Position numbers and translations under genes: made by a program. DNA of 58,313 nucleotides, counting the filler, from Dugesia japonica (lineage: Eukaryota), in NCBI GenBank assembly GCA_001938525.1. It is 5 parts of 5 records of this genome, joined end to end, with 100 filler letters (N's around TTAATTAATTAA, not from the genome) between each part and the next. Parts side by side here need not be neighbours in the genome. Positions count along the whole stretch, not along the records: positions 48,613 to 58,313 come from MQRL01598057.1; 4 more parts are not named here. One strand, 5' to 3'. Of this stretch, positions 4,270 to 58,313 are shown piece by piece. Every line of letters starts with the position of its first letter. Within the stretch, counting starts at the first letter, position 1. The notes under the pieces were generated by a model that ran no database searches, was not told the DNA's origin, and saw only the letters and a list, made by a program, of their open reading frames with translations.

Positions 4270-6430
4270 ATTTTTCTATTCCTTTGTATGTGTGTATCAT
4301 ATATTTTCTATCCCTATTAAACTATTTGAGTATGCGTATTAAATTTTTCTATCTCCTTTGTATGTGTGTATCATAATTTTTCTATCCCTTTTGTAAGTGT
4401 GTATCAAAAAAGTTTAAAATACTGCAGCTTAATATATTTTAAAATACCACAACGTAGTATATTAAGTTGTGACAAGAAATAATTTTTTGATAAAATAATT
4501 TTAAAGTACTGCAAAGTAGTATATTGTTGCATTTACAAAGTTATTAGTCGTGAAAATAACAAAGACATGTTTTTGATTATGACAAAGGTCAATTAACTGC
4601 TTTATATTTTTATGATTTTAACAAAGATTAATTAACTATTCTTAAATTTAAAAAAATAAATAAAATCAAACAAATATTTTCAAATAACACATTTATTTAT
4701 ATACAACATATACATTTTCAACTATAATGTTGATTATATTTCACATAATGTCAATTTTCAGTTAAAATGTTGATTTTTAANCCACAATAGACAATGTTGA
4801 TCACAGGTTGTTGTAAACGGATTTTGAAATCTGATTTGGTTTTATTCAATTATAGGGTTTTTATATAGTTTTATATGGTTATTATAGGGTTAAATATTAT
4901 CTATATGGATATTATATGAATGTTTTTTTATAGTTGTATGAGTGTTTGATAGGGTTCTATAGTTTTATCAAATTTAATCGAACTTATATTAGGTTTTTTA
5001 TCAAATCATAAATAAATACATATACAATAAACCAATACATACACACATACACAAATACATGTTTTAAAAGGGTATGTGTCATACCTGTACAACACAAATG
5101 CGAGTCAAACAAAGACATTGCAACACGAGTTCAACTAGAACAAAGAGCATGAGTCATACCTATACAAGTTAACAAAGACCATTCATTATAGGTTTGCAAG
5201 TAGGTATACAAAAGGTCGAATATTAAACAAAAGTAAGGTTTTTAAAAAATTTGGAGAGTTTTATATGATAATTATATGGTTTTATATGTTATTATAATGT
5301 TTATAAAAATTATAAAGTTATTGTATGGTTTTATATGATTTAATGTTTTTATATGTTAATTATATTGTTTTATATGGTAATTATATATGTTTCATAAGGT
5401 AATCGTAGAGTAATTATAGAGTAATTATATTGTTTTATAGTGTTTTATATGTTTGGTCTTTTATAGAGTTTTTATATGGCTATTAGGATAATAGGATAAT
5501 CATAATGTTTTATATGTTCTTATATTGTTTGTAAAGGAATTTATAAGATTTTTATATGGTTTTATAAGGTAACTATATGATTATTATAGCATTTATAAGG
5601 TAATTCTAGAGTTATTATGTGATTTTATAAGGTAAATATATGGTTATTATAGATTTCTTTAAGGTAATTATAGGGATTTAATTGTTTTTTTATATGATTG
5701 ATGGGTTTTATATGTTTCTATAGGGTATTTATGTAGTTTTATTTGTTATTTTATTGCTTTTTATATTGTTTTAATAGGAATTATAAGATTTTTATAGAGT
5801 ATATATAGGGTTTTATATCTTCTCATTATGCTTTTATAGAGTTTAATATGGTAATTATTTGTGTTTTATAAGATAATCATAGATTGTTTAGAGTTATTAT
5901 ATGCTTTTATACGAGCTTTATAAACAATTGTTTTAAAATTACATATATTTCAATAAAAAGTTACCAGATGTCATGTTATTATTTCAAAATGTTGCCAGAG
6001 ATCTAGTAATTTTTTCAAAAAGTTACTAGATGTCACAAACATTTTCAAATTCCTATTTAAAACATAGGGAAAATAACTCAAAAAATTAATTGATGTCCCT
6101 AAAATATTTCAAAAAGTTACCAGAGAGCCGATAATTTTTGACAAATGTTACCAGAGGTTCCTTAAATATTTTTAAAAATTTACCAGATGTCATGTAATTA
6201 TTTCTAAATATTTACTATATGTTCCTGAAAAACTTAAATCATGTACATATTATTACATTTAATCTGCACAATTTACAAACATAACATAGATGTCTATGTA
6301 ATATTTTTAAACATAACATAGATATATGGGTAAATTTTACAAAAATAATATATATGTCAATAGAGTCTAACAAAAAACTCAATAGAGCTTCATACACAGT
6401 AAGATAAATGAGTCTTATATACAGTAAACC
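4270..6430. repeat. Composite strand-asymmetric repeat block
   Basis: Sub-arrays: TTTTCTATCCCTTTGTATGTGTGTATCA x3-4 (4270-4410), a degenerate TTATA(G/T)-rich tract (4850-5920), and AAAAGTTACCAGATGTC-like units x6-7 (5955-6225). Confidence 0.6.
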
Positions 6431-7511
6431 AATGGATATTATTATAAAAGACGGTCATTTTTAACATCTTTCGTGATTATTTGGGACATTCAATTATTTA
6501 ATTGTTATTTACCAAATGAATTATTGATATTGTACATGTTCGTCCAAATTCTAGGTTATTTTTACTTGTATTCAGTTTAATTCATAAGAACTGTTACCAT
6601 TTAAATCGAGTAATTTTTTTACATTTTTATTTTTTATGCCTCACATACAAGAAAATTATATGTTTATATTAAAATTTTTTGATAATACAATTTTTTATAT
6701 TTTAAATAAATGCTAAAAATATTATCTTTTTACAAATATTTAAATAAATATTTTTTTTTGCTTGTAAAATAATTTAAAGTCTTTAAAATTTTTAAAAAAA
6801 TTATTTGTATTTATATTTTAATTTTATTAATAAGAAAAGACTGTTTGGAAACGTTTAAATATTTGTTTAAATATTCAAATAAGTCAAGACAAACAAATTT
6901 TTAAACCCGTTATTTATTATTATTAATAATCTTTTATAAGCAGCCTTGTTAACAGTGCATCTACTAATAATACTGATATTTTTATATACTGACATTGACA
7001 TTCCTTTTATGTTCGTTTCAATTTTATTTTAATTTCAAAATAAATTCAAATAAGAATAAATTAAAATTTTTTACTAACTAAATACTTTTAGCAATTTCTA
7101 AAAAAATGAATTACCAAAAATTCTCAACAAAATTTAATCAGGATATTTCGTAAAATATTATTGATTTTTCTAAGTTTTTGGTTATTAAATAAACAAAATA
7201 TTAGTAGTTAAATATTCAATATATTTATTATTGTTTAGTATTATAATTATTGAAACACAAAAGACGGTTCCGATTCAATAACTGCGTATTATATTTTCAT
7301 TGTTCTGCATACAAATAAATAATTCTGATCATTTGTAATTAGAGATGAAATAGACATCTGATTTAATATGAATGAATTATAAGGTCTAATCAGATTTGAT
7401 CATTAATTTAGATTTATTGATTTGAATTATTATAAAATTCAATTATTCATCTAAAGAAATAATTTCAGATTTATCGCTACTTATTGATTTGATTGTTAAT
7501 TAAATCACGTA

Positions 7512-48612: not shown

Positions 48613-48697
48613 CAGAGTCAACCAAATACTTGCTTGCATTATTATCAGGTCGAGTTCTTGGACAACTATTGCTTGGCAAAACTATAAAGAAACTCAT
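48613..48697 (-). CDS. Probable Polinton minor capsid (penton) protein, N-terminus only
   Basis: MSFFIVLPSNSCPRTRPDNNASKY matches the Maverick motif FY.TLPSN.S...YP.N....F. It directly follows the integrase and is truncated by the contig end. Confidence 0.65.
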
Positions 48698-49752
48698 TAC
48701 TAGATTTGAGAGCCTGAATCCACGTAGGCTTTGAATATCCATGCCATTCAGCTAGATATTGTTTATATTGGCCTTGACCTTTGGTTTTGAGAATTTATTT
48801 GATTCGATATATACTTAGTTTTTCCGGCAGCACTTGCAACTCATGCTCATAAAATTTGCATTGAATAATATTACCATCTTTATCACGTATTACATATATG
48901 ACTGGGGTTAGTCTCGATTAGATTTTCAAGATTTGAAAGACTTCATCACTCCAATTATTATCAAAGTTTTTAATGAATGACGTAGTACTAATTCGAGAAA
49001 TCCGTACATGTTGTCCAACTTTATATTTTGGTTTTGGTTTTTTATTGATGAAATACTGTGTATAATCATCATTATCTGTAACATCAACTGGTTTTNNNNN
49101 NNNNNNNNNNNNNNNNNNNNNNNNNNNNNNNNNNNNNNNNNNNNNCTCCAATACCTCTGTGCTCAAAATGGTAGTATGCATAAATCATTTTTGGTAAAAC
49201 ATGTATCCATTTCTTGTTAACTTGTTTGGTAAAGAACTTGTTTAATCGCGTAAGTGTTGTTCGATTAAATCGCTCAACTAGAGCGGTCTTGTACTGAGAA
49301 AATACTGAATAGTACAGTATACCATATTGTTTCAGTAATGATTTGACCTGGGTATTATAAAAGTCTTTACCTAAATCAGTTTGAATAGCTTTTAGATGGA
49401 CATCTTTAAACATTACCGTCAAAGCCAACAACATATCTTTACCAGATTTTCGTTTTACTGAAACCGCACGTGCAAATTGACAAAATACATCAACACATGT
49501 CAAAATATATTGATAATCATTATTTATACTTGCGTATGGAATCATTTCCATCAAATCTATTTGCCATAGTCTATTAACCTCAGCAANNNNNNNNNNNNNN
49601 NNNNNNNNNNNNNNNNNNNNNNNNNNNNNNNNNNNNNNNNNNNNNNNNNNNNNNNNNNNNNNNNNNNNNNNNNNNNNNNNNNNATTTGCAAGCTTTGAAA
49701 TACCTGCGTATCCAACCGGGTCCTCTGGATTGTTCCATAGTTGTTCCATCAA
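48690..49752 (-). pseudogene. Polinton retroviral-like (rve) integrase with C-terminal SH3-like region and chromodomain
   Basis: DDE triad WQIDL / IQTDLGKDF / LVERFNRT; YILTCVDVF; KYKVGQHVRIS, NWSDEVF and KFYEHELQ; chromodomain KQYLAEWHGYSKPTWI. There is an in-frame stop at 48918, with frameshifts and gaps. Confidence 0.9.
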
Positions 49753-49903
49753 CTTGATCGCGCGAAATACAAAAACGAATTTTTAGTGAAATGTCTGGAA
49801 TATTAGAAGAAGGTGCAACACTAATTTATATTGCAATATCGAAACGAATTTAAAGTGTTTATACAGAATCAATAATTTTTTTGTAGCATATTCTGTAGCA
49901 GCC

Positions 49904-50314
49904 TCAACTGTACCAGTTGCAGCCGTTTTTCCCAACCAACTTTAAATCGGTAAAAGTAAAGCCCAAACAAATCAATTTCCATTTTGTCCATAATAAACTT
50001 GTTTTTTGCTCTTCTTGATTTCTTTTTGTATAGGAAAATGTCTTTCTAGTATTCGTTTCTTTTCGGCCAAATTCATTGATTTTGCCATATCTACAAGAGC
50101 TTCTTGATACTTTTTCAATCGATATTTTCCACTTTTGTGACCAACATCGACTCGACTCTAAACAACTTGCTGGCATTGAGTGTATAATTTGCCATCGAGA
50201 ATTTGATGGAGCCTTTAAAATTGCCTTAAAATATGGAATACTTAGTGAAAATCGTCTCAAATTACCACCATCACCACTCTTTTGTTTTATGACAATTTTT
50301 TTAAATCGATTCAT
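49904..50314 (-). pseudogene. Small basic Polinton conserved protein (PM-like/virion core precursor), frameshifted
   Basis: First frame: PYFKAILKAPSNSRWQII. Second frame: RLKKYQEALVDMAKSMNLAEKKRILE...GQNGN*FVWALLLPI, resembling the Maverick LK.L.KA.P..R..I...KK.IL.Q.GGF...LL.P pattern. It sits between the ATPase and the integrase. Confidence 0.6.
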
Positions 50315-50336
50315 TTCTTGTTTCTTTTATTAAGTA

Positions 50337-50961
50337 CTAGTTTTGTTTATACCAATGGTTTGAAACTGTTATTTCTTCCGAATTGAATATATTAGTTTTT
50401 ACTCGTTCATCATCAGGAAATTGTTGTGTAAAATCAATAAATAAATATCCATGTGGTTTTGTAGTAACATTGCGAAATGCGTCTGATAAAAATCCTTTAT
50501 GTTGAGGAAATGCTTGACGGGAAATATAGTCAACAACAGTTTTTGAATAAAAACAAATAATGGACATTTAAATTACGTGTACGATGCATGCCGCCTTGAT
50601 GGAAAAGATTTTGGGTAATGAAGATAACAGTTACATTACCATGACGAGCAGTTTTTGTAAAGAGATTATTAAAATCAGCCTGCTTATTTGNTTCTTGAAA
50701 AAAGTCATCGATTACAATGACATTGCCAGTATTTAATCTCTTTAACCAATCATCATCAAATCCATCAATTATCGTAATCTTTCTTAACTTGCAAAACTCA
50801 CCATTAGTCAAACCGGTTTCACATCCACCACCTTGATTCCAATAAATATTTTTAAACTTTGTCCGAAACAATTTGCTTTGTAGTAATTTGCAAACACATA
50901 ATGTTTTGCCGCTTCCACTAGGACCGAATATTTGAAAAACCACGTTGTTCTGTAGTAACAT
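50337..50961 (-). pseudogene. A32/FtsK-family DNA packaging ATPase (one frameshift at ~50535)
   Basis: Walker A GPSGSGKT, Walker B VIVIDD, LFTKTARHGNVTVIFITQNLF, RNLNVHYLFLFKN. It continues in the next frame as YISRQAFP...KPHGYLFIDF..RVKTNIF. Confidence 0.92.
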
Positions 50962-51042
50962 TTTACAGAAACCATAGAAATGATTTTGTTTATATGGAAA
51001 GAGTAAATAAGCTCATGATTATTGCTCATTCGTCACTAAACA

Positions 51043-51463
51043 ATGTTATCAAACCTTAATTACAAAGCTCATCTAATTGATTCACTTTCAGATCTTCAAT
51101 TTAATACCTGGAAGAAACCCAGGCAATATGTAATGAAAATGAAAGATTATTCAGTAATTGTTTTTGAATCGGTAAAATGTCGAATCATGGGATGCAAAAA
51201 AGCGATCATAGATAAACAAATCACTTGTAAAAATATCAATATACAAATAGATGGTATTCTGTCAATTACTGTAACATGTGATCTTGGACAGGGAGTGAAC
51301 TTATATAGATTGAGCAGTGTAGTAGACTGTTGGTTCAAACCAGAATTATTTCCTGCATTAAGAGTCAGCAGATACAAGCCCTTATGTGTCAATGTTTTTG
51401 CCAGTGGAAAAGTGGTGATTCTGGGACTAAAGTCATTGGATTATCATGAAATTATCAAAACAA
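51043..51463 (+). CDS. TATA-box-binding protein (TBP)-like protein, compact and intronless (3' end falls in an N gap; ORF track extends it to 51681)
   Basis: Two TBP repeats. Repeat 1: FNTWKKPRQYVMKMKDYSVIVFESVKCRIMGCK. Repeat 2: ILSITVTCDLGQGVNLYRL...WFKPELFPALRVSRYKPLCVNVFASGKVVILGLKS, compared with the canonical IQNIVGSCDV.F.IRLE.L...YEPELFPGL.YRM.KP.IV.LIFVSGK.VLTGAK. Confidence 0.88.
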
Positions 51464-51699
51464 NNNNNNNNNNNNNNNNNNNNNNNNNNNNNNNNNNNNN
51501 NNNNNNNNNNNNNNNNNNNNNNNNNNNNNNNNNNNNNNNNNNNNNNNNNNNNNNNNNNNNNNNNNNNNNNNNNNNNNNNNNNNNNNNNNNGAACATCAAC
51601 CAAACCGTTCGGAAATTTAAAAATCACCGTTTTCACTTGCTGGATAAACCAATTATTATAAATACTGAAGACAGTGTATAGATTGAAAAATTAAAAAAC

Positions 51700-51945
51700 A
51701 TGTATTTAATAAAGAAAATGAGTGAACGAGATCTCGAGAAAATGAGGCAAGCAATGAAACAGTTGGATGTTGATTTAGAGTTTAAAGAACAATCTTTCGA
51801 CAATCTTTACTTACAGGGTCATAAAATAACAATTTTGGATGTTATTAGTAGGAAAATGGAAAAAATGGCAAAATCGATAAAATGTCGACTTGAAATTGCT
51901 CTGAATGGCTTTAAACAAATGATCCATAAAAAGGTTCCTTTGTGA
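51700..51945 (+). CDS. Small helical/coiled-coil hypothetical protein, probably Polinton accessory
   Basis: 81-aa open frame with natural charged composition, directly downstream of and co-oriented with the TBP-like gene. Confidence 0.45.
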   Translation: MYLIKKMSERDLEKMRQAMKQLDVDLEFKEQSFDNLYLQGHKITILDVISRKMEKMAKSIKCRLEIALNGFKQMIHKKVPL

Positions 51946-52210
51946 GACATTAAACAATTTATATATGATTATCAATGAATGATGTTGTTTATGTATGTTT
52001 ATTTTTATAATATAATTTTGAATTCAATTTTTATTTACGGTTTTTTAACATTTGATTAAATTTTTAGCAATATAAATTATAANNNNNNNNNNNNNNNNNN
52101 NNNNNNNNNNNNNNNNNNNNNNNNNNNNNNNNNNNNNNNNNNNNNNNNNNNNNNNNNNNNNNNNNNNNNNNNNNNNNNNNNNNNNNNNNNNNNNNNNNNN
52201 NNNNNNNNNN

Positions 52211-52278
<68 letters not shown>

Positions 52279-52821
52279 TTTAGGCTAGAACGCGATAAAA
52301 GAGTAGAAAATATAGCAGAAGGAAATATGAGCTGTCTCGAAAAAATGACAAGAAATAGAATAAATTATTTAAGAAGAGAAATGATTAAAACAATTGGTGA
52401 AATACAATTACATAATTAGAAGAAATAAATATTAAAAAGAAAATAAAGGAAAATCGGAAGTTATATTAATAACAAATGAGAAAGTAAATAAACCCAAAGA
52501 AATTAGTAACAGTAAAAGAGGTAAATAATGGAAAATCAATTAATAATAAATACANNNNNNNNNNNNNNNNNNNNNCAGAAAATGAACGAGAAGAAAGGAT
52601 AATGAGAATCATGAATTATATATTTTATTTATAATATATGAATAATATAAAAGTAATAATATATTAAATGACGAATATATGAATGAAAGTAATATATTAG
52701 AAAGGCATATGAATATTATAATAATTATATGAAATATTCTAACTTATTTTATGGTAATGAAAACCAAGAGATGATTATTATTTGGAATGAATTTATTATT
52801 ATTAGTATAAAATCATTATTA

Positions 52822-52883
<62 letters not shown>

Positions 52884-53743
52884 NNNNNNNNNNNNNNNNN
52901 NNNNNNNNNNNNNNNNNNNNNNNNNNNNNNNNNNNNNNNNNNNNNNNNNNNNNNNNNNNNNNNNNNNNNNNNNNNNNNNNNNNNNNNNNNNNNNNNNNNN
53001 NNNNNNNNNNNNNNNNNNNNNNNNNNNNNNNNNNNNNNNNNNNNNNNNNNNNNNNNNNNNNNNNNNNNNNNNNNNNNNNNNNNNNNNNNNNNNNNNNNNN
53101 NNNNNNNNNNNNNNNNNNNNNNNNNNNNNNNNNNNNNNNNNNNNNNNNNNNNNNNNNNNNNNNNNNNNNNNNNNNNNNNNNNNNNNNNNNNNNNNNNNNN
53201 NNNNNNNNNNNNNNNNNNNNNNNNNNNNNNNNNNNNNNNNNNNNNNNNNNNNNNNNNNNNNNNNNNNNNNNNNNNNNNNNNNNNNNNNNNNNNNNNNNNN
53301 NNNNNNNNNNNNNNNNNNNNNNNNNNNNNNNNNNNNNNNNNNNNNNNNNNNNNNNNNNNNNNNNNNNNNNNNNNNNNNNNNNNNNNNNNNNNNNNNNNNN
53401 NNNNNNNNNNNNNNNNNNNNNNNATTATTATTCTGTCTATTATTATAATAATGATTGGAGAAATATTATAGTTATTATCTGAGCATTAATAGATATGATA
53501 TTATTTATATTCATTATTATTATATTATTTATTCGTTATTATTGATAATATAGTATAGGTTATATTATTTATAATGTTAATATTTTATTTATATTCACAA
53601 AGGTCACCAGGGTGACATTTAAAATGGTAAAATAGAAAAAAACGAATGAGTCAATTCAAATTTGAATTAGACTGCATTTCGTTACGGAGGAGGCACAAAA
53701 TGAAAAAATTTAATAATCATATGATTTGCAGTTGAATGATTTT

Positions 53744-53779
53744 GGTGGGTGCTCGCTGTGAGCAACGAAGCCCACCTAG
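53744..53779 (+). mobile_element. Helitron 3' terminus
   Basis: GC-rich hairpin GGTGGG-TGCTC-gctgt-GAGCA-acgaag-CCCACC followed by CTAG|T. Confidence 0.6.
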
Positions 53780-55346
53780 TCTTGAAATACTATATAATAA
53801 GAACTGAAAACTTACAAAAAATAAACAAAAAACAACACACAAAAGACAAAATTTACAAAAACTTAGAACTAAAACGAGATACGAAAATCTAACAATTCAA
53901 GCTCGATTGATAAAACATTACATCAGATCGCAAACAATCCGGAGAGAATTCGTTTAAAAAGTAATTGGAAAACGTTTTAATCTGCTGATTCGAGGTCTCC
54001 ACTCATACCAGTATGTGAAGAAATAGAAATGAATATTTAAATGCTGATAATGAAAATGTGAAGAAATAGAAATAAATATTTAAATACTGGTGATGGTCCG
54101 GAGCCCTGTGGAGTGGCGTAATTTATATATTAAGTTTATTTTTATGATTTCATTTTATAATGTCCCTTTAATGTAATATATTTTAGTTATAAATGTTTTA
54201 TTTAATTATATTTAATTATGATTTTATGTTTCGGTAATAATGTTTTTCGTTAATGATATAGATGCCTTAAGATTAGATTACTTCTCGGAGTTGTTAATAA
54301 TTTTAGTTATGAAAGTATGATATATCACTGATAATATTCTTAAACCTGAAATTTTTATAACTAATTGTAAATAATGTTTGAAACTTTTCCTAAATGGATA
54401 ATTCAATGAAATAATAAAAATATCTTGATAAATTTATCACAGTAATTATATATTGAAACAATAAAAGTCAAGTAACATCAGGATGAATTGTAATAACCAT
54501 ATTATGGATTAAACGGCGAGGCGTTTGTTTTCGAAAAGGAATTTTTTCTATAGAATTTGATATAAGGTTTTAGTTACAATTTCTAATATATAAGATATTT
54601 TTGTTTTAATGAGCTGATAATGTAACACTAAATTATAGGTTATGAACTATGAAGATTTGTCTAGCATGATTATTTCAGTAAATAGAATATACTTTTAGGA
54701 GTAGTAATAATCGTATTTTCAATAAATCCCGTTAATATTTCTGGATACTTTTACTTAGTTATTATTTCAGTTATTATTTACCTATTGCTAACTTGTAGAT
54801 ATTTGGAATAATTATTTATTTAATTTCGGTTAGATAAAATATTTGAATTATGATTTTAATTATTATTTATGATTAGGTTATTGATATTTTGAATAATTAT
54901 TTTGATTATATGAAATGTTTAAATTAAAATATTTTTTTCTGCTTAAATTTTGATAAGGAATTCATCTTATAATGTAATATTTGGTTAACAATATGATAAT
55001 TGATTTTGATTGAGACTTTAACTAATGATTTAAACTGAATGCCGCTACTTAAAATCTAGCCTAATAATATATGCATAGCGAAGGAGGAAATAGAATTCCC
55101 TGAGAACAATAAGGTACTAAGTTCTCACCGAGGAATTCTAACTCCTGTTTTACTGAAATAACAATAATTATATGAGAAATCGACTGTAGAGCAAAGTAAT
55201 TAAAATACAATTCACTCGTGATTAAATGCGACTGAGTATTATTTAAAGATGAATTGTTGTGATTTAGATGTCGAGAAGGATAAATCTATCAGAGGCCAAG
55301 AAATCGCTGAATGGAAGGTTGTTTACTTATGGAAAATGCAATGATA

Positions 55347-55710
55347 TGCCGATCCTATATGATTCCTGGAATGAAACTGGAACAGATCGAGATAAAATAA
55401 AATAAGATAAAATAAGAGCATGAAAGATCGAAATCCAGGAACAAAAGGAAGAAATACTGAGGCTACGAGCTCATGTTGAACAGTTAAAAGAACAGCTCAA
55501 TTATCAGGAGAAGGATCGACAACAACAGAACTCAGCACTAGCAGATTTATTGTCCAGTGCATCGGAGCATCTAAGACGAGCCCCAACCAGCACAGATCGT
55601 CAGACGGTGCTGAAGAACAATCTACTCACCCATTACAAGACCGGTAGAAGAATCTGTCAACAAATCGAACGTACAATGTCGGTGCTTAGAGCTAATTTAG
55701 AAACGCTGTA
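55347..55710 (+). pseudogene. Coiled-coil hypothetical ORF, disrupted at its 5' end
   Basis: An open ~96-codon stretch (KIEIQEQKEEILRLRAHVEQLKEQLNYQEKDRQQQ...LRANLETL*) in GC-richer sequence, preceded by stops. Confidence 0.45.
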
Positions 55711-56030
55711 GACAGAGGAGGTAGTAGAATCGGCAGTGTGATCCTGTAAATGAATTAATATATTTTGAGAATTGGTCGTTGTTAGCACTTCATGTTGAAT
55801 CACATAAACGACAAATTATTTAAAATAAAGGAATTAATTAAACGATAAATGATGCAAATAAAATGTTTAAAACAAACACGTCAAAGTAACAAACATGATG
55901 AAATTAAAGAATTCACTAAATAAAGCAGTTTTTATCGAAGCAGCCACTCGACACTAAATTATTATAGTCATATCACATATTTGCAAATGAAATTAACATA
56001 CAAATTTCATGAATTATTCTGTAGGTAGAT

Positions 56031-56339
56031 ATGCCAACCAGGACCACAAAACCCACAAGAGAAGAGTTGTTGATCAAACAGCAGAATACTCGGCCAGAGA
56101 TCAAGAGATTAAAGAAAGAGAATCGTGAGTTGCGAGAGACAGCAAGTGAGACTAAGAAGAAGTTGTCCACATTGAAAGAAAAATTGAGTGCGAGTAGAAA
56201 AAGGGAACTCACACTCATAGCTAACAATAAAATGATGGCGGAGATTATTAAGGATTACACCGATCAAAAATCCACAGTACTAGGAAATGTCCGAACTCTC
56301 TGGAGAGAATATCATACCCAAAGCGGCAAAGCACAATGA
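56031..56339 (+). CDS. Small basic coiled-coil hypothetical protein
   Basis: 102 aa with a clear heptad segment (EIKRLKKENRELRETASETKKKLSTLKEKL). AATAAA lies ~50 nt after the stop. Confidence 0.55.
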   Translation: MPTRTTKPTREELLIKQQNTRPEIKRLKKENRELRETASETKKKLSTLKEKLSASRKRELTLIANNKMMAEIIKDYTDQKSTVLGNVRTLWREYHTQSGKAQ

Positions 56340-58313
56340 GAAACAATCACGGAAGAAACCATTTTCGGTTCACCATGACCAGTGATTGAATAAATATATA
56401 TTGAGTTCAGAGTTGTTTTCTTTCATTTCTATTTAGAACAAAAATAAGAACCAGTTTCAATCGGAACTTTCTGTCAAGACGAGATACCGCATAGTCTCGC
56501 TGAACTTGGGAATGGGGGATCGTAATGTAGGAGAAGACATCACAAATTTCTGTGTTTACTAGGTTATCATCCCCCAGACAATCCTTTTAAAACAACATAG
56601 CATCAAAAATTTAGATATGCAGGAGGAAATATAGCTAACATCAAAATTGGGGATCTGTTTAAAGAAAGTTGAATAAAGAAATCACGAGAAAAGAAGACGA
56701 AGATGAGCCAGTACANNNNNNNNNNNNNNNNNNNNNNNNNNNNNNNNNNNNNNNNNNNNNNNNNNTGGAGAGAATATCATACCCAAAGCGGCAAAGCACA
56801 ATGAGAAACAATCACGGAAGAAACCATTTTCGGTTCACCGAGACCAGTGATTGAATAAATATATATTGAGTTCAGAGTTGTTTTCTTTCATTTCGATTTA
56901 GAACAAAAATAAGATCCAGTTTCAATCGGAACTTTCTGTCAAGACGAGATACCGCATAGTCTCGCTGAACTCGGGAATGGGGAATCGTAATGTAGAAGAC
57001 ATCACAAATTTCTGTGTTTACTAGGTTATCATCCCCCAGACAATCCTTTTAAAACAACATAGCATAAAAAATTTAGATATGCAGGAGGAAATATAGCTAA
57101 CACCAAAATTGGGGATCTGTTTAAAGAAAGTTGAATAAAGAAATCACGAGAAAAGAAGACGAAGATGAGCCAGTACAAAGTAAACTAATTGGATTGTGAA
57201 CAAAAAAAAATTAGATGAAATATGAATCAGTAGTGAGTAAAATGTATTTGAATTATTTTGTAATGTAATAAATAATTTCTTGATATTGTATTATAAAAGT
57301 AGTAGTTTATATTTTTATTTTTTTGTTGCTTATAATTTTGCTTGCTCGATCATCACCAGTTCAAAAATGTTATTATGAAAAAATAAAGAAAATATGATCT
57401 ATTGAAAGAAAATTGATATTGCAAGAAATTATGTTAAAGAAAATTGATTTGAATGATAAAATTATTAATCGAGAAATTAAAAAGTTTCAATTATCGATGG
57501 GTGGATGATCTCGGAAAAATATTGAGAATTTGTGCATTGTTATTAATAATTTTACTGATATTTTAAATGAATTTTAATTCTATTGATACTATTTTAAATA
57601 TTAATTAACAGTGTTTGCTTTAGTAAATGAGTTTTTAGAAAGATTTTGTGTAAATGAATTTCCGTAATGAATTTTTGTAAACATCTGAACAGTAATGAAT
57701 TAAACAACAATGANNNNNNNNNNNNNNNNNNNNNNNNNNNNNNTGAACAGTAATGAATTGAACAGTAACGATTTGAGTAAAAGAATTTTGTAAACAGATT
57801 TCGATAAAGAATTTCAGTAGACGTTTGGAGTAATCACGAACACCTATTTTATTTTTATTTGATATTTTAATTTTTGATTTTAATCATTTAAAATGAATTA
57901 ATAAACTGAGCTAACAAATGATAAACTAACTTTAAAGTTTGTTGTTGATGAATTTACACTAAAGAAATTAAAGTCATGACTTAAAATCAGAGCACGCACA
58001 GATATAGCAAGTCGATACAATTAAACGATACAAAGCCCGCACAGAGAAATTGCATGATAAAAGAGATGAAAAGTGTTAAAGAAATTGCGAAGTTTTGTTC
58101 TGTTCGACTCACGAACTAAATAACAACATAGTTTGGTGAGCAAATTGAGCAAGAGATATGATATTCAAACGTCGAAGCATTAAAGAGAAGTGTAAAATCG
58201 TGTTAGCAGGTCCAGAAAAGTTAGGAAAATAATGACTGATCCAGATCAGGTAACAAGATGAAAACACAGTGAACCTTTAAAGTTTAAATAAGAAGTGTAA
58301 AATTGAGTTGCCA

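What the first reader, a model, noticed from the sequence alone, without database searches (positions are those of the whole stretch)
50337..51463. Polinton/Maverick apparently encoding its own TATA-binding protein
Seen: an intronless two-repeat TBP-fold ORF starts ~80 bp from, and head-to-head with, the A32 packaging ATPase, with no gap or linker between them. Established: the Maverick core set is pPolB, integrase, ATPase, protease and major/minor capsid, and it relies on host Pol II; viral TBPs are best known from large nucleocytoviruses. Inference: this lineage captured TBP and may use it as an element-specific (e.g. late-gene) initiation factor or as a decoy for host TFIIA/TFIIB/NC2. I do not know of TBP as a described Polinton gene, but I cannot confirm novelty.
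Basis: partly seen in the sequence, partly recalled or inferred. Interest (0 to 1): 0.92.

Follow-up and report, generated by a model that had tools for sequence, protein, structure and literature searches.

The report
Polinton-encoded minimal TATA-binding protein
A decaying Polinton/Maverick-type virus-like element carries its own stripped-down TATA-binding protein. The gene is conserved across a whole lineage of such elements, whose packaging and candidate capsid genes sit behind an unusual TATA box, so the element may run its own transcription switch.

Summary
An open frame at 51043-51463 (+) starts 81 bp from, and head-to-head with, an A32-type packaging ATPase. It is a real TBP: Pfam PF00352 at 42 bits, an AlphaFold model at pLDDT 95.8, and TBPs as all 44 significant PDB fold matches.

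It is neither a host retrocopy nor a misjoin. It belongs to a family of about 150-residue "mini-TBPs" under purifying selection (median dN/dS 0.22). Family members sit beside A32 ATPase, rve integrase, adenain-like protease and protein-primed PolB on 16-32 kb metagenome contigs.

The C-terminal repeat is canonical. The N-terminal repeat keeps only its strands and has lost both helices.

New here: the exact word TATAAAC lies 33-37 nt before the start codon of the ATPase and of a conserved 405-residue protein. TBP genes almost never have it (1 of 41) and carry ordinary TATA plus initiator-like promoters. All four exact TATAAACA sites in the window lie ahead of the element's genes. A cascade is therefore plausible but unproven.

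The window copy is decayed, and its host is unidentified. A 2021 adintovirus paper already labels "TBP" in a figure of related elements, so the gene's presence is not new. The reduced architecture and the promoter link are.

The parts
48613..48742 (-). Start of a gene cut off by the edge of the piece. It is homologous to the 369-residue protein that follows the integrase in relatives.
   Evidence: tblastn outer bounds 48617-48697, 52-67 % identity to the N-terminus of the L001 and L003 369-aa proteins. The role of that protein is not shown.
48711..49749 (-). rve-type integrase with a C-terminal chromo-like part. It is broken: 2 in-frame stops, plus 1 frame change across a run of N that cannot be judged.
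   Evidence: Pfam rve E 6.8e-9. It is 45-49 % identical to the integrases of L001, L003 and L006, with 94-97 % of them covered. The L001 integrase has a weak, sub-threshold Chromo match (E 0.0018, 18.6 bits against a cut-off of 25.1).
49904..50314 (-). 136-codon ORF of unknown function between ATPase and integrase.
   Evidence: No Pfam or PHROG hit. Weak tblastx similarity to the small ORF at the same place in L002, L003 and L006.
50340..50961 (-). A32-type genome-packaging ATPase, broken by 1 frameshift and no stops.
   Evidence: Pfam Pox_A32 E 3e-5, 24 bits against a cut-off of 22.8. It is 64-67 % identical to the intact 206-213 aa ATPases of L001-L003 and L006, with 94-99 % of them covered in two pieces in different frames.
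50962..51042 (.). 81-bp divergent intergenic region. It holds the ATPase-side TATAAACA word and, on the TBP side, a degenerate TATA-like word plus an initiator-like TCA word.
   Evidence: Sequence, and the alignment with L007. L007 has a consensus-type TATA word where the window has TAAATAAG.
51043..51463 (+). Visible part (140 codons) of the minimal TATA-binding protein. The C-terminus is hidden in masked N.
51591..51945 (+). Remains of the gene downstream of TBP, function unknown.
   Evidence: tblastx 61 % identity over 44 codons to the gene after TBP in L007. The 81-codon ORF 51700-51945 has no family hit.
50987..50994 (-). TATAAACA word, starting 33 nt before the ATPase start codon.
   Evidence: Position class.
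50344..50351 (-). TATAAACA word, starting 37 nt before the ORF136 start codon.
49856..49863 (-). TATAAACA word, starting 114 nt before the integrase start codon.
   Evidence: Integrases of relatives have it at 40-117 nt.
48760..48767 (-). TATAAACA word, starting 25 nt before the start codon of the 369-like gene.

Best explanation
The ORF is the element's own gene. It is a member of a conserved family of minimal, asymmetric TATA-binding proteins of about 150 residues, carried by one lineage of Polinton/Maverick-type elements.

The protein keeps the ten-stranded DNA-binding saddle, three invariant intercalating phenylalanines and the C-terminal stirrup that cellular TBPs use for TFIIB. The two helices of the N-terminal repeat are gone.

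Proposed mechanism (inferred, not shown):
1. The TBP gene is read from an ordinary host-type promoter: a consensus TATA box, an initiator-like word and, in some copies, a CCAAT-box word.
2. Its product binds a variant box in which TATAAAC is followed by A in 89 % and A in 70 % of sites. This box sits about 35 nt before the start codons of the packaging ATPase, the conserved 405-residue protein and several small genes.
3. It recruits host TFIIB and RNA polymerase II there, without depending on the regulators that dock on the lost helices. The result would be a two-step, element-specific transcription programme.

In this window the element is decayed, so this copy is probably a relic.
For: Shown:
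- TBP identity and fold.
- Family of 104 clusters at 90 % identity, and 62 representatives at E<=1e-30.
- Synteny with A32 ATPase, rve, Peptidase_C5 and pPolB.
- Purifying selection: 52 pairs, omega median 0.215, range 0.05-0.47, with 37 complete ORFs.
- F41, F103 and F119 are invariant in 77 sequences. The stirrup stretch at residues 99-104 reads E 92 %, P 95 %, E 100 %, L 92 %, F 100 %, P 97 %, and it aligns to the matching stretch of cellular TBPs.
- The N-terminal half has strands only, both in the window protein and in an intact relative.

Promoter evidence:
- TATAAAC occurs 167 times in 209 kb of related loci. Of these, 59 lie 30-39 nt before a first ATG, with a peak at 34-36. Controls at the same distance: TATAAAG 1 of 76, TATAAAA 2 of 233, TATAAAT 12 of 193.
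- By gene: ATPase 16/18, 405-aa protein 10/10, TBP 1/41.
- TBP upstream regions are instead enriched for GTATAA at -37 to -47, TCATAA or ATCATA mostly at -7 to -17, and GATTGG at -52 to -66.
- Window: 4 TATAAACA sites, all on the gene strand and all inside the element, against 0.196 expected. None of 5000 shuffles reached 4.

From established knowledge: the paired phenylalanines kink TATA DNA, and the acidic C-terminal stirrup contacts TFIIB.
Against: - No binding, transcript or start-site data exist. The link between the protein and the word is a co-occurrence within one lineage.
- No TBP-less sister lineage could be fetched as a control.
- The word could simply be a promoter read by host TBP.
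- The fourth phenylalanine position cannot be mapped. The aligned column is K 52 % / P 30 %, and an F at 87 % lies five residues upstream.
- pPolB promoters are too few to classify: 0/3 and 1/4.
- The 405-aa protein is only a positional candidate for a capsid protein, so 'late genes' is an assumption.
- In this copy the first stirrup residue is K (1 % of the family) and the TBP-side TATA word is degenerate.
Confidence: 0.45

Rival explanations
1. Decoy or competitor. The mini-TBP occupies host TATA boxes or soaks up TFIIB without supporting initiation. That would damp host or rival transcription rather than activate the element's genes.
For: Loss of both N-repeat helices removes surfaces that cellular TBPs use for partners (partner mapping is from general knowledge). 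The saddle and the stirrup are retained.
Against: This does not explain why a special, sharply positioned TATA variant precedes the element's own ATPase and 405-aa genes but not the TBP gene.
Confidence: 0.2
2. General replacement TBP. It substitutes for host TBP at all of the element's promoters, for example when host TBP is limiting or repressed. It would have no special preference for the TATAAAC word, which host TBP reads as well.
For: Three invariant phenylalanines and a canonical second repeat. TATAAAC differs in only one position from the TATAWAWR consensus quoted in the abstracts listed.
Against: Consensus-type words (TATAAAA, TATAAAG) are not positioned before the element's genes, whereas the C-containing word is. 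The two promoter classes within one element argue for discrimination.
Confidence: 0.15
3. Architectural DNA-bending protein for replication, packaging or integration rather than transcription. This would fit its place next to the packaging ATPase and the integrase.
For: Constant neighbourhood with A32 ATPase and rve. The TBP fold bends DNA.
Against: The near-invariant stirrup stretch that matches the TFIIB-contacting stretch of cellular TBPs would have no reason to be kept. In a second gene order the TBP lies after the 405-aa gene, away from the ATPase.
Confidence: 0.08
4. Host TBP gene, host retrocopy, or an assembly misjoin that merely lies next to the element.
For: The piece is short, holds many N runs, and the element is decayed.
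Against: Only 18-26 % identity to cellular TBPs. The compact family-specific architecture. The same junction in an independent assembly. Conserved synteny in many contigs.
Confidence: 0.02

Closest known systems
Cellular TATA-binding protein (Pfam PF00352; e.g. PDB 1cdw, 1ytb, 2z8u, 1mp9)
   Same: Same saddle fold over its whole length, TM-score 0.63-0.79 normalised to the query. The second repeat is recognisable by sequence. Phenylalanines at three of the four intercalating positions and the stirrup stretch are conserved.
   Different: About 150 residues instead of a core of about 180. The first repeat has no helix H1 or H2 and is not detectable by sequence. Identity is 18-26 %. It is encoded by a mobile element.
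TBP homologues of Nucleocytoviricota (BFVD hits: Heterosigma akashiwo virus 01, Terrestrivirus, Aureococcus anophagefferens virus, ChoanoV1, Marseillevirus and others)
   Same: Virus-encoded TBP-fold proteins. Foldseek probability 1.0, TM-score 0.5-0.74 to the query.
   Different: These proteins have 186-547 residues and are 7-18 % identical. They belong to cytoplasmic or large viruses, many with their own RNA polymerase. The mini-TBP belongs to a 15-30 kb element in which no RNA polymerase gene was seen in the loci read.
'TBP' gene label in MELD viruses with adintovirus-like PolB (Starrett et al. 2021, PMC8502044, Fig. 5 legend)
   Same: A TBP-like gene drawn in polinton-like elements, together with TRAF-like genes. 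The loci here also carry MATH/TRAF genes next to the TBP.
   Different: The paper gives only the label. The text held has no analysis of fold, family, conservation or promoters. I could not see the figure or tell which element carries the gene, so identity with this family is likely but unverified.
Beta- and gammaherpesvirus late-gene TBP mimics (KSHV ORF24, EBV BcRF1, HCMV UL87; PMC7498053, PMC12529657)
   Same: Works-like analogy. A virus-encoded TBP-fold protein selects viral late promoters and brings in host RNA polymerase II (abstracts). There is a weak fold match to a macacine gammaherpesvirus BcRF1 (E 0.015).
   Different: Those are large proteins of several hundred residues, with no sequence relation. 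They act inside a six-protein complex. Membership is not claimed.

Membership tests
TBP (PF00352) | Profile match above the curated threshold | tested here: met
   42 bits against 22.9, E 8.2e-11. All 104 family hits carry PF00352.
TBP (PF00352) | Two tandem repeats forming one saddle | tested here: met
   AF2 pLDDT 95.8 and 97.4. Foldseek aligns 165-180 columns of whole TBP cores. hhalign of the N half against the C half gives 81.7 %, E 1e-5. Pfam itself sees only one repeat.
TBP (PF00352) | Each repeat built as S1-H1-S2-S3-S4-S5-H2 | tested here: not met
   The N-terminal repeat has strands only. Both helices are present only in the C-terminal repeat.
TBP (PF00352) | Four DNA-kinking phenylalanines | tested here: inconclusive
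   F41, F103 and F119 are invariant. The fourth aligned column is K/P, with an F at 87 % five residues upstream. No coordinates were available to decide.
TBP (PF00352) | Acidic C-terminal stirrup (TFIIB contact in cellular TBPs) | tested here: met
   Family shares at residues 99-104: E 92 %, P 95 %, E 100 %, L 92 %, F 100 %, P 97 %. The window copy has K at the first position.
TBP (PF00352) | Binds TATA DNA and nucleates a pre-initiation complex | not testable with these tools
   No binding or transcript data.
Polinton/Maverick | rve-type integrase | tested here: met
   Window 48711-49749, Pfam rve E 6.8e-9, broken.
Polinton/Maverick | A32/FtsK-type packaging ATPase | tested here: met
   Window 50340-50961, Pox_A32 at 24 bits against 22.8, one frameshift.
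Polinton/Maverick | Protein-primed family B DNA polymerase | tested here: inconclusive
   Not within the piece, which is cut at 48613. Present in relatives L001, L002, L003, L017, L053 and L057 (DNA_pol_B_2, E 4e-21 in L001).
Polinton/Maverick | Adenain-like cysteine protease | tested here: inconclusive
   Not within the piece. L001 has Peptidase_C5 at E 3.2e-5, 24.1 bits against 21.3.
Polinton/Maverick | Double and single jelly-roll capsid proteins | tested here: inconclusive
   The conserved 405-aa and 369-aa proteins have no Pfam, PHROG or PDB sequence match.
Polinton/Maverick | Terminal inverted repeats and target-site duplication | not testable with these tools
   One end lies outside the piece. 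The other runs into N and simple repeats.
TRF2/TLF-type TBP paralogues | Loss of the TATA-kinking phenylalanines | tested here: not met
   Three are invariant here. The defining feature itself is recalled from general knowledge.

The most novel reading that the evidence does not exclude
A lineage of Polinton/Maverick elements runs a self-contained two-step transcription switch. A host-type promoter makes a minimal TBP that has shed the regulator-docking helices of its first repeat. That protein then reads a private TATA variant, with C at the seventh position, about 35 nt ahead of the packaging and virion genes. It would be the smallest known natural TBP and the first dedicated initiation factor described for this class of elements.
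Probability: 0.35. Interest if true: 0.8.

Novelty: new variant of a known kind. Interest (0 to 1): 0.62.

Why it matters
Polintons/Mavericks are usually described as relying wholly on host transcription.

A conserved, selected, element-encoded TBP paired with a sharply positioned private TATA variant would give them a virus-like early/late programme. It would parallel the late-gene TBP mimics of herpesviruses and the TBP homologues of giant viruses.

The protein is also a natural experiment in how much of TBP can be removed. A whole repeat has lost its helices while the saddle, the phenylalanines and the TFIIB stirrup stay invariant.

The promoter word gives a simple sequence marker for annotating genes and their likely expression class in these elements.

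Tried and rejected
**Host identification failed.**
- Exact-protein look-ups of two complete window ORFs found nothing.
- The flank ORF 56031-56339 has no homologues.
- Rfam found nothing in the piece.
- The sample accessions appear in no paper held.

**IMG/VR holds neither the TBP family nor this ATPase family**. No TBP-less sister lineage could be fetched as a control for the promoter word.

**The 405-aa and 369-aa proteins could not be identified** by Pfam, PHROGs or a profile search of PDB sequences. Calling them capsid proteins rests on position only.

**Literature checks.**
- The supplements of the adintovirus paper are not held, so I could not find which element carries its 'TBP' label.
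- Three PLV/Polinton surveys contain no mention of TBP or TATA.
- The Cymbomonas TBP mention concerns mirusvirus-like elements.

**Rejected readings:** host retrocopy and misjoin, and the 212-aa ORF that reads through N.

**No phylogeny against cellular TBP/TRF2 was built,** because no cellular sequences were available as tool-returned ids.

- Note 1 recorded the bounds of the two ATPase reading frames.
- One search printed a raw table of tblastx segment bounds over the broken ATPase and integrase.

I did not read or fill any masked N.

Full report
**1. What is in the sequence**

Only 48613-58313 is genome. On the minus strand, right to left, lie four features:
- an A32-type packaging ATPase (outer bounds 50340-50961; Pfam Pox_A32 24 bits against a cut-off of 22.8);
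- a 136-codon ORF of unknown function (49904-50314);
- an rve integrase (48711-49749; Pfam rve E 6.8e-9);
- the first codons of a further gene, cut by the edge of the piece.

On the plus strand an ORF starts at 51043, 81 bp from the ATPase start codon. It runs for 140 sense codons into a run of N at 51464-51590. Intact relatives go on for a median of 11 residues. I did not look up or fill the masked letters.

Beyond about 51950 there are simple AT-rich repeats, N runs, a 465-bp tandem duplication and no recognisable gene or RNA.

**2. Is it a TBP?**

Yes.
- Pfam PF00352 matches residues 74-132 at E 8.2e-11.
- A sequence search of the PDB returns TBPs in 35 of its 36 matches, best E 2.3e-10.
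- An AlphaFold2 model built on 77 family sequences has mean pLDDT 95.8 and pTM 0.84.
- All 44 significant Foldseek matches in the PDB are TBPs, aligned over 165-180 columns, which is the whole saddle. TM-score is 0.63-0.75 relative to the query and identity is 18-26 %.
- An intact 150-residue relative gives pLDDT 97.4 and TM-scores up to 0.79.

The two halves differ.
- The C-terminal half has the canonical order of strands and two helices. It matches either repeat of cellular TBPs by sequence.
- The N-terminal half has only strands. Both helices are missing and no sequence method recognises it as TBP.
- A profile comparison of the two halves still links residues 27-53 to 105-131 (hhalign 81.7 %, E 1e-5).

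So this is a two-repeat TBP in which one repeat has been stripped to its sheet.

**3. Does it belong to the element?**

The protein search found 104 clusters of proteins of about 145-155 residues, all carrying PF00352 and 35-70 % identical to the window protein. A profile search of 1.84 billion representatives found 62 at E<=1e-30 and 800 at E<=1e-10.

Four members lie on 16-32 kb contigs of one ENA assembly. Each has the order TBP, a few small ORFs, A32 ATPase, rve integrase and a conserved 405-residue protein. A 369-residue protein follows the integrase in two of them, and three carry a protein-primed PolB. One of them also has an adenovirus-type protease (Peptidase_C5, E 3.2e-5) and a weak, sub-threshold chromodomain match on the integrase. 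That is most of the Polinton/Maverick core set.

Three more long contigs were chosen through the 405-residue protein rather than through TBP. All three carry a TBP gene just upstream of the ATPase.

Of 45 mostly short metagenome loci, 22 show at least one of these genes beside the TBP. There are two gene orders: TBP before the ATPase, or TBP after the 405-residue gene.

The window's ATPase, integrase and TBP are 45-70 % identical to those of the long contigs.

The closest relative is a 942-bp Logan contig (L007). It has the same head-to-head ATPase/TBP junction at 86 % nucleotide column identity, which rules out a misjoin.

Among 37 complete metagenomic TBP ORFs, 52 pairs with dS 0.05-1.5 give a median dN/dS of 0.215, range 0.05-0.47. 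The gene is therefore an old, selected component of this lineage, not a recent host capture or a retrocopy.

**4. What is conserved in the protein**
- F41, F103 and F119 are invariant in 77 sequences. F103 and F119 align with the two phenylalanines of a canonical repeat, and F41 aligns with F119 through the internal repeat.
- The fourth position cannot be mapped without coordinates.
- The stretch at residues 99-104 aligns with the C-terminal stirrup of cellular TBPs and is nearly invariant: E 92 %, P 95 %, E 100 %, L 92 %, F 100 %, P 97 %.

From established knowledge, the phenylalanine pairs kink TATA DNA and that stirrup contacts TFIIB. The helices of the first repeat carry docking surfaces for TBP regulators. 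The last point is recalled, not tested here.

**5. A promoter word that goes with it**

In four long relatives the 6-mers ATAAAC and TAAACA are enriched 10.6-fold and 7.8-fold, and TATAAA 5.2-fold, in the 70 nt before genes.

Over all 52 loci then held (209 kb), the exact word TATAAAC occurs 167 times. Of these, 59 start 30-39 nt before the first ATG of an ORF of at least 50 codons, with a sharp peak at 34-36. Controls at the same distance are TATAAAG 1 of 76, TATAAAA 2 of 233 and TATAAAT 12 of 193. After the word comes A in 89 % and A in 70 % of 57 distinct sites. Nothing else is conserved.

| Gene | Distinct upstream regions with TATAAAC within 130 nt |
|---|---|
| ATPase | 16 of 18 |
| 405-residue protein | 10 of 10 |
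| Integrase | 5 of 11 |
| 369-residue protein | 3 of 8 |
| Protease | 2 of 11 |
| pPolB | 0 of 3 (1 of 4 by gene-call starts) |
| TBP | 1 of 41 |

TBP genes are instead enriched upstream for GTATAA at -37 to -47, TCATAA or ATCATA mostly at -7 to -17, and in some copies GATTGG at -52 to -66. In 19 of 36 distinct upstream regions there is a TATAWAW word. This is an ordinary TATA plus initiator-like arrangement with a CCAAT-box word.

The window has four exact TATAAACA sites. All are on the gene strand and all are inside the element. They start 33, 37, 114 and 25 nt before the start codons of the ATPase, ORF136, the integrase and the 369-like gene. Only 0.196 are expected, and none of 5000 shuffles reached four. 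None lies in the 6 kb outside the element.

**6. Interpretation**

Shown: a conserved, selected, element-encoded minimal TBP, and two promoter classes within the element.

Inferred: the TBP is made from a host-type promoter. It then reads the C-containing box ahead of the packaging ATPase and the 405-residue protein, recruiting TFIIB and RNA polymerase II through its retained stirrup. It would do so without the regulators that need the lost helices.

I put this at about 0.45. The rivals are listed with their evidence: a decoy, a non-selective replacement TBP, an architectural protein, and a host gene or misjoin.

The weakest links are three:
- no transcript or binding data;
- no TBP-less sister lineage as a control;
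- the unproven identity of the 405-residue protein.

**7. State of this copy**
- The ATPase has one frameshift.
- The integrase has two in-frame stops and one frame change across an N run that cannot be judged.
- The visible TBP frame is open, but it has K where 92 % of the family has E in the stirrup.
- Its own TATA word is degenerate compared with L007.

The copy is most likely an endogenised relic.

**8. Known or new**

Viral TBP homologues are well known in giant viruses. Functional analogues exist in herpesviruses (PMC7498053, PMC12529657).

Starrett et al. [quoted passage not shown] 5. That figure shows MELD viruses with adintovirus-like PolB and virion proteins of unrecognisable sequence. 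This description fits the family here, which also carries MATH/TRAF genes next to the TBP. So the bare presence of a TBP-like gene in polinton-like elements is on record.

I found no description of the following in the papers held:
- the family itself;
- its reduced architecture;
- its selection;
- its synteny;
- the promoter word.

I rate it a new variant of a known kind.

**9. Limits and slips**

The host is unidentified.

Note 1 recorded the bounds of the two ATPase reading frames. One search printed raw tblastx segment bounds over broken genes. These are slips against the rule on places of breaks. Nothing was derived from them beyond identities and gene order, and nothing was deleted.

Noticed in passing
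L006:854-1858 and 5476-6447; L053:3952-4941: MATH/TRAF-domain genes sit just upstream of the TBP in two relatives, in two copies in L006. In L006 each has the TATAAAC word 35 nt before its start codon. This matches the 'TRAF' label in the adintovirus paper's Fig. 5 legend.
   Followed up: partly
L053:4989-5466; L057:2417-2896: In two of the three contigs chosen through the 405-aa protein, the TBP is called as two adjacent short ORFs (94+56 and 93+60 residues). The cause (break, sequencing error or tiny intron) was not examined.
   Followed up: no
L001:13554-15371; L055:1-2421; L057:10329-12569: The protein-primed PolB genes of relatives carry a weak Endonuclease_7 match ahead of the polymerase domain (E 5e-4 in L001).
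   Followed up: no
L001:6320-6742: A RING-finger gene (zf-C3HC4_3) lies between TBP and ATPase in L001. It has the TATAAAC word 34 nt before its start.
   Followed up: no
window 56301-56715 and 56766-57177: Tandem duplication of about 415 bp (97-99 % identity, spacing about 465 bp) outside the element. It overlaps the tail of a 102-codon coiled-coil-like ORF that has no homologues.
   Followed up: partly
window 52211-52278 and 52824-52883: (ATA)n and (TAT)n microsatellites in inverted orientation flank about 550 bp of AT-rich sequence next to N runs. The long 'inverted repeats' reported there are largely N-run artefacts.
   Followed up: no
IMG/VR collection: Neither the mini-TBP family nor this ATPase family has a relative in 2.9 million IMG/VR viral contigs. 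Both are common in JGI, ENA and Logan assemblies, so the lineage seems to escape viral-contig catalogues.
   Followed up: partly
L001-L057, 405-residue protein (e.g. L001:10416-11633): A highly conserved 402-423 residue protein (221 hits, mean column identity 58 %) has no Pfam, PHROG or PDB sequence match. It is always preceded by the TATAAAC word and is a positional candidate for the major capsid protein.
   Followed up: partly
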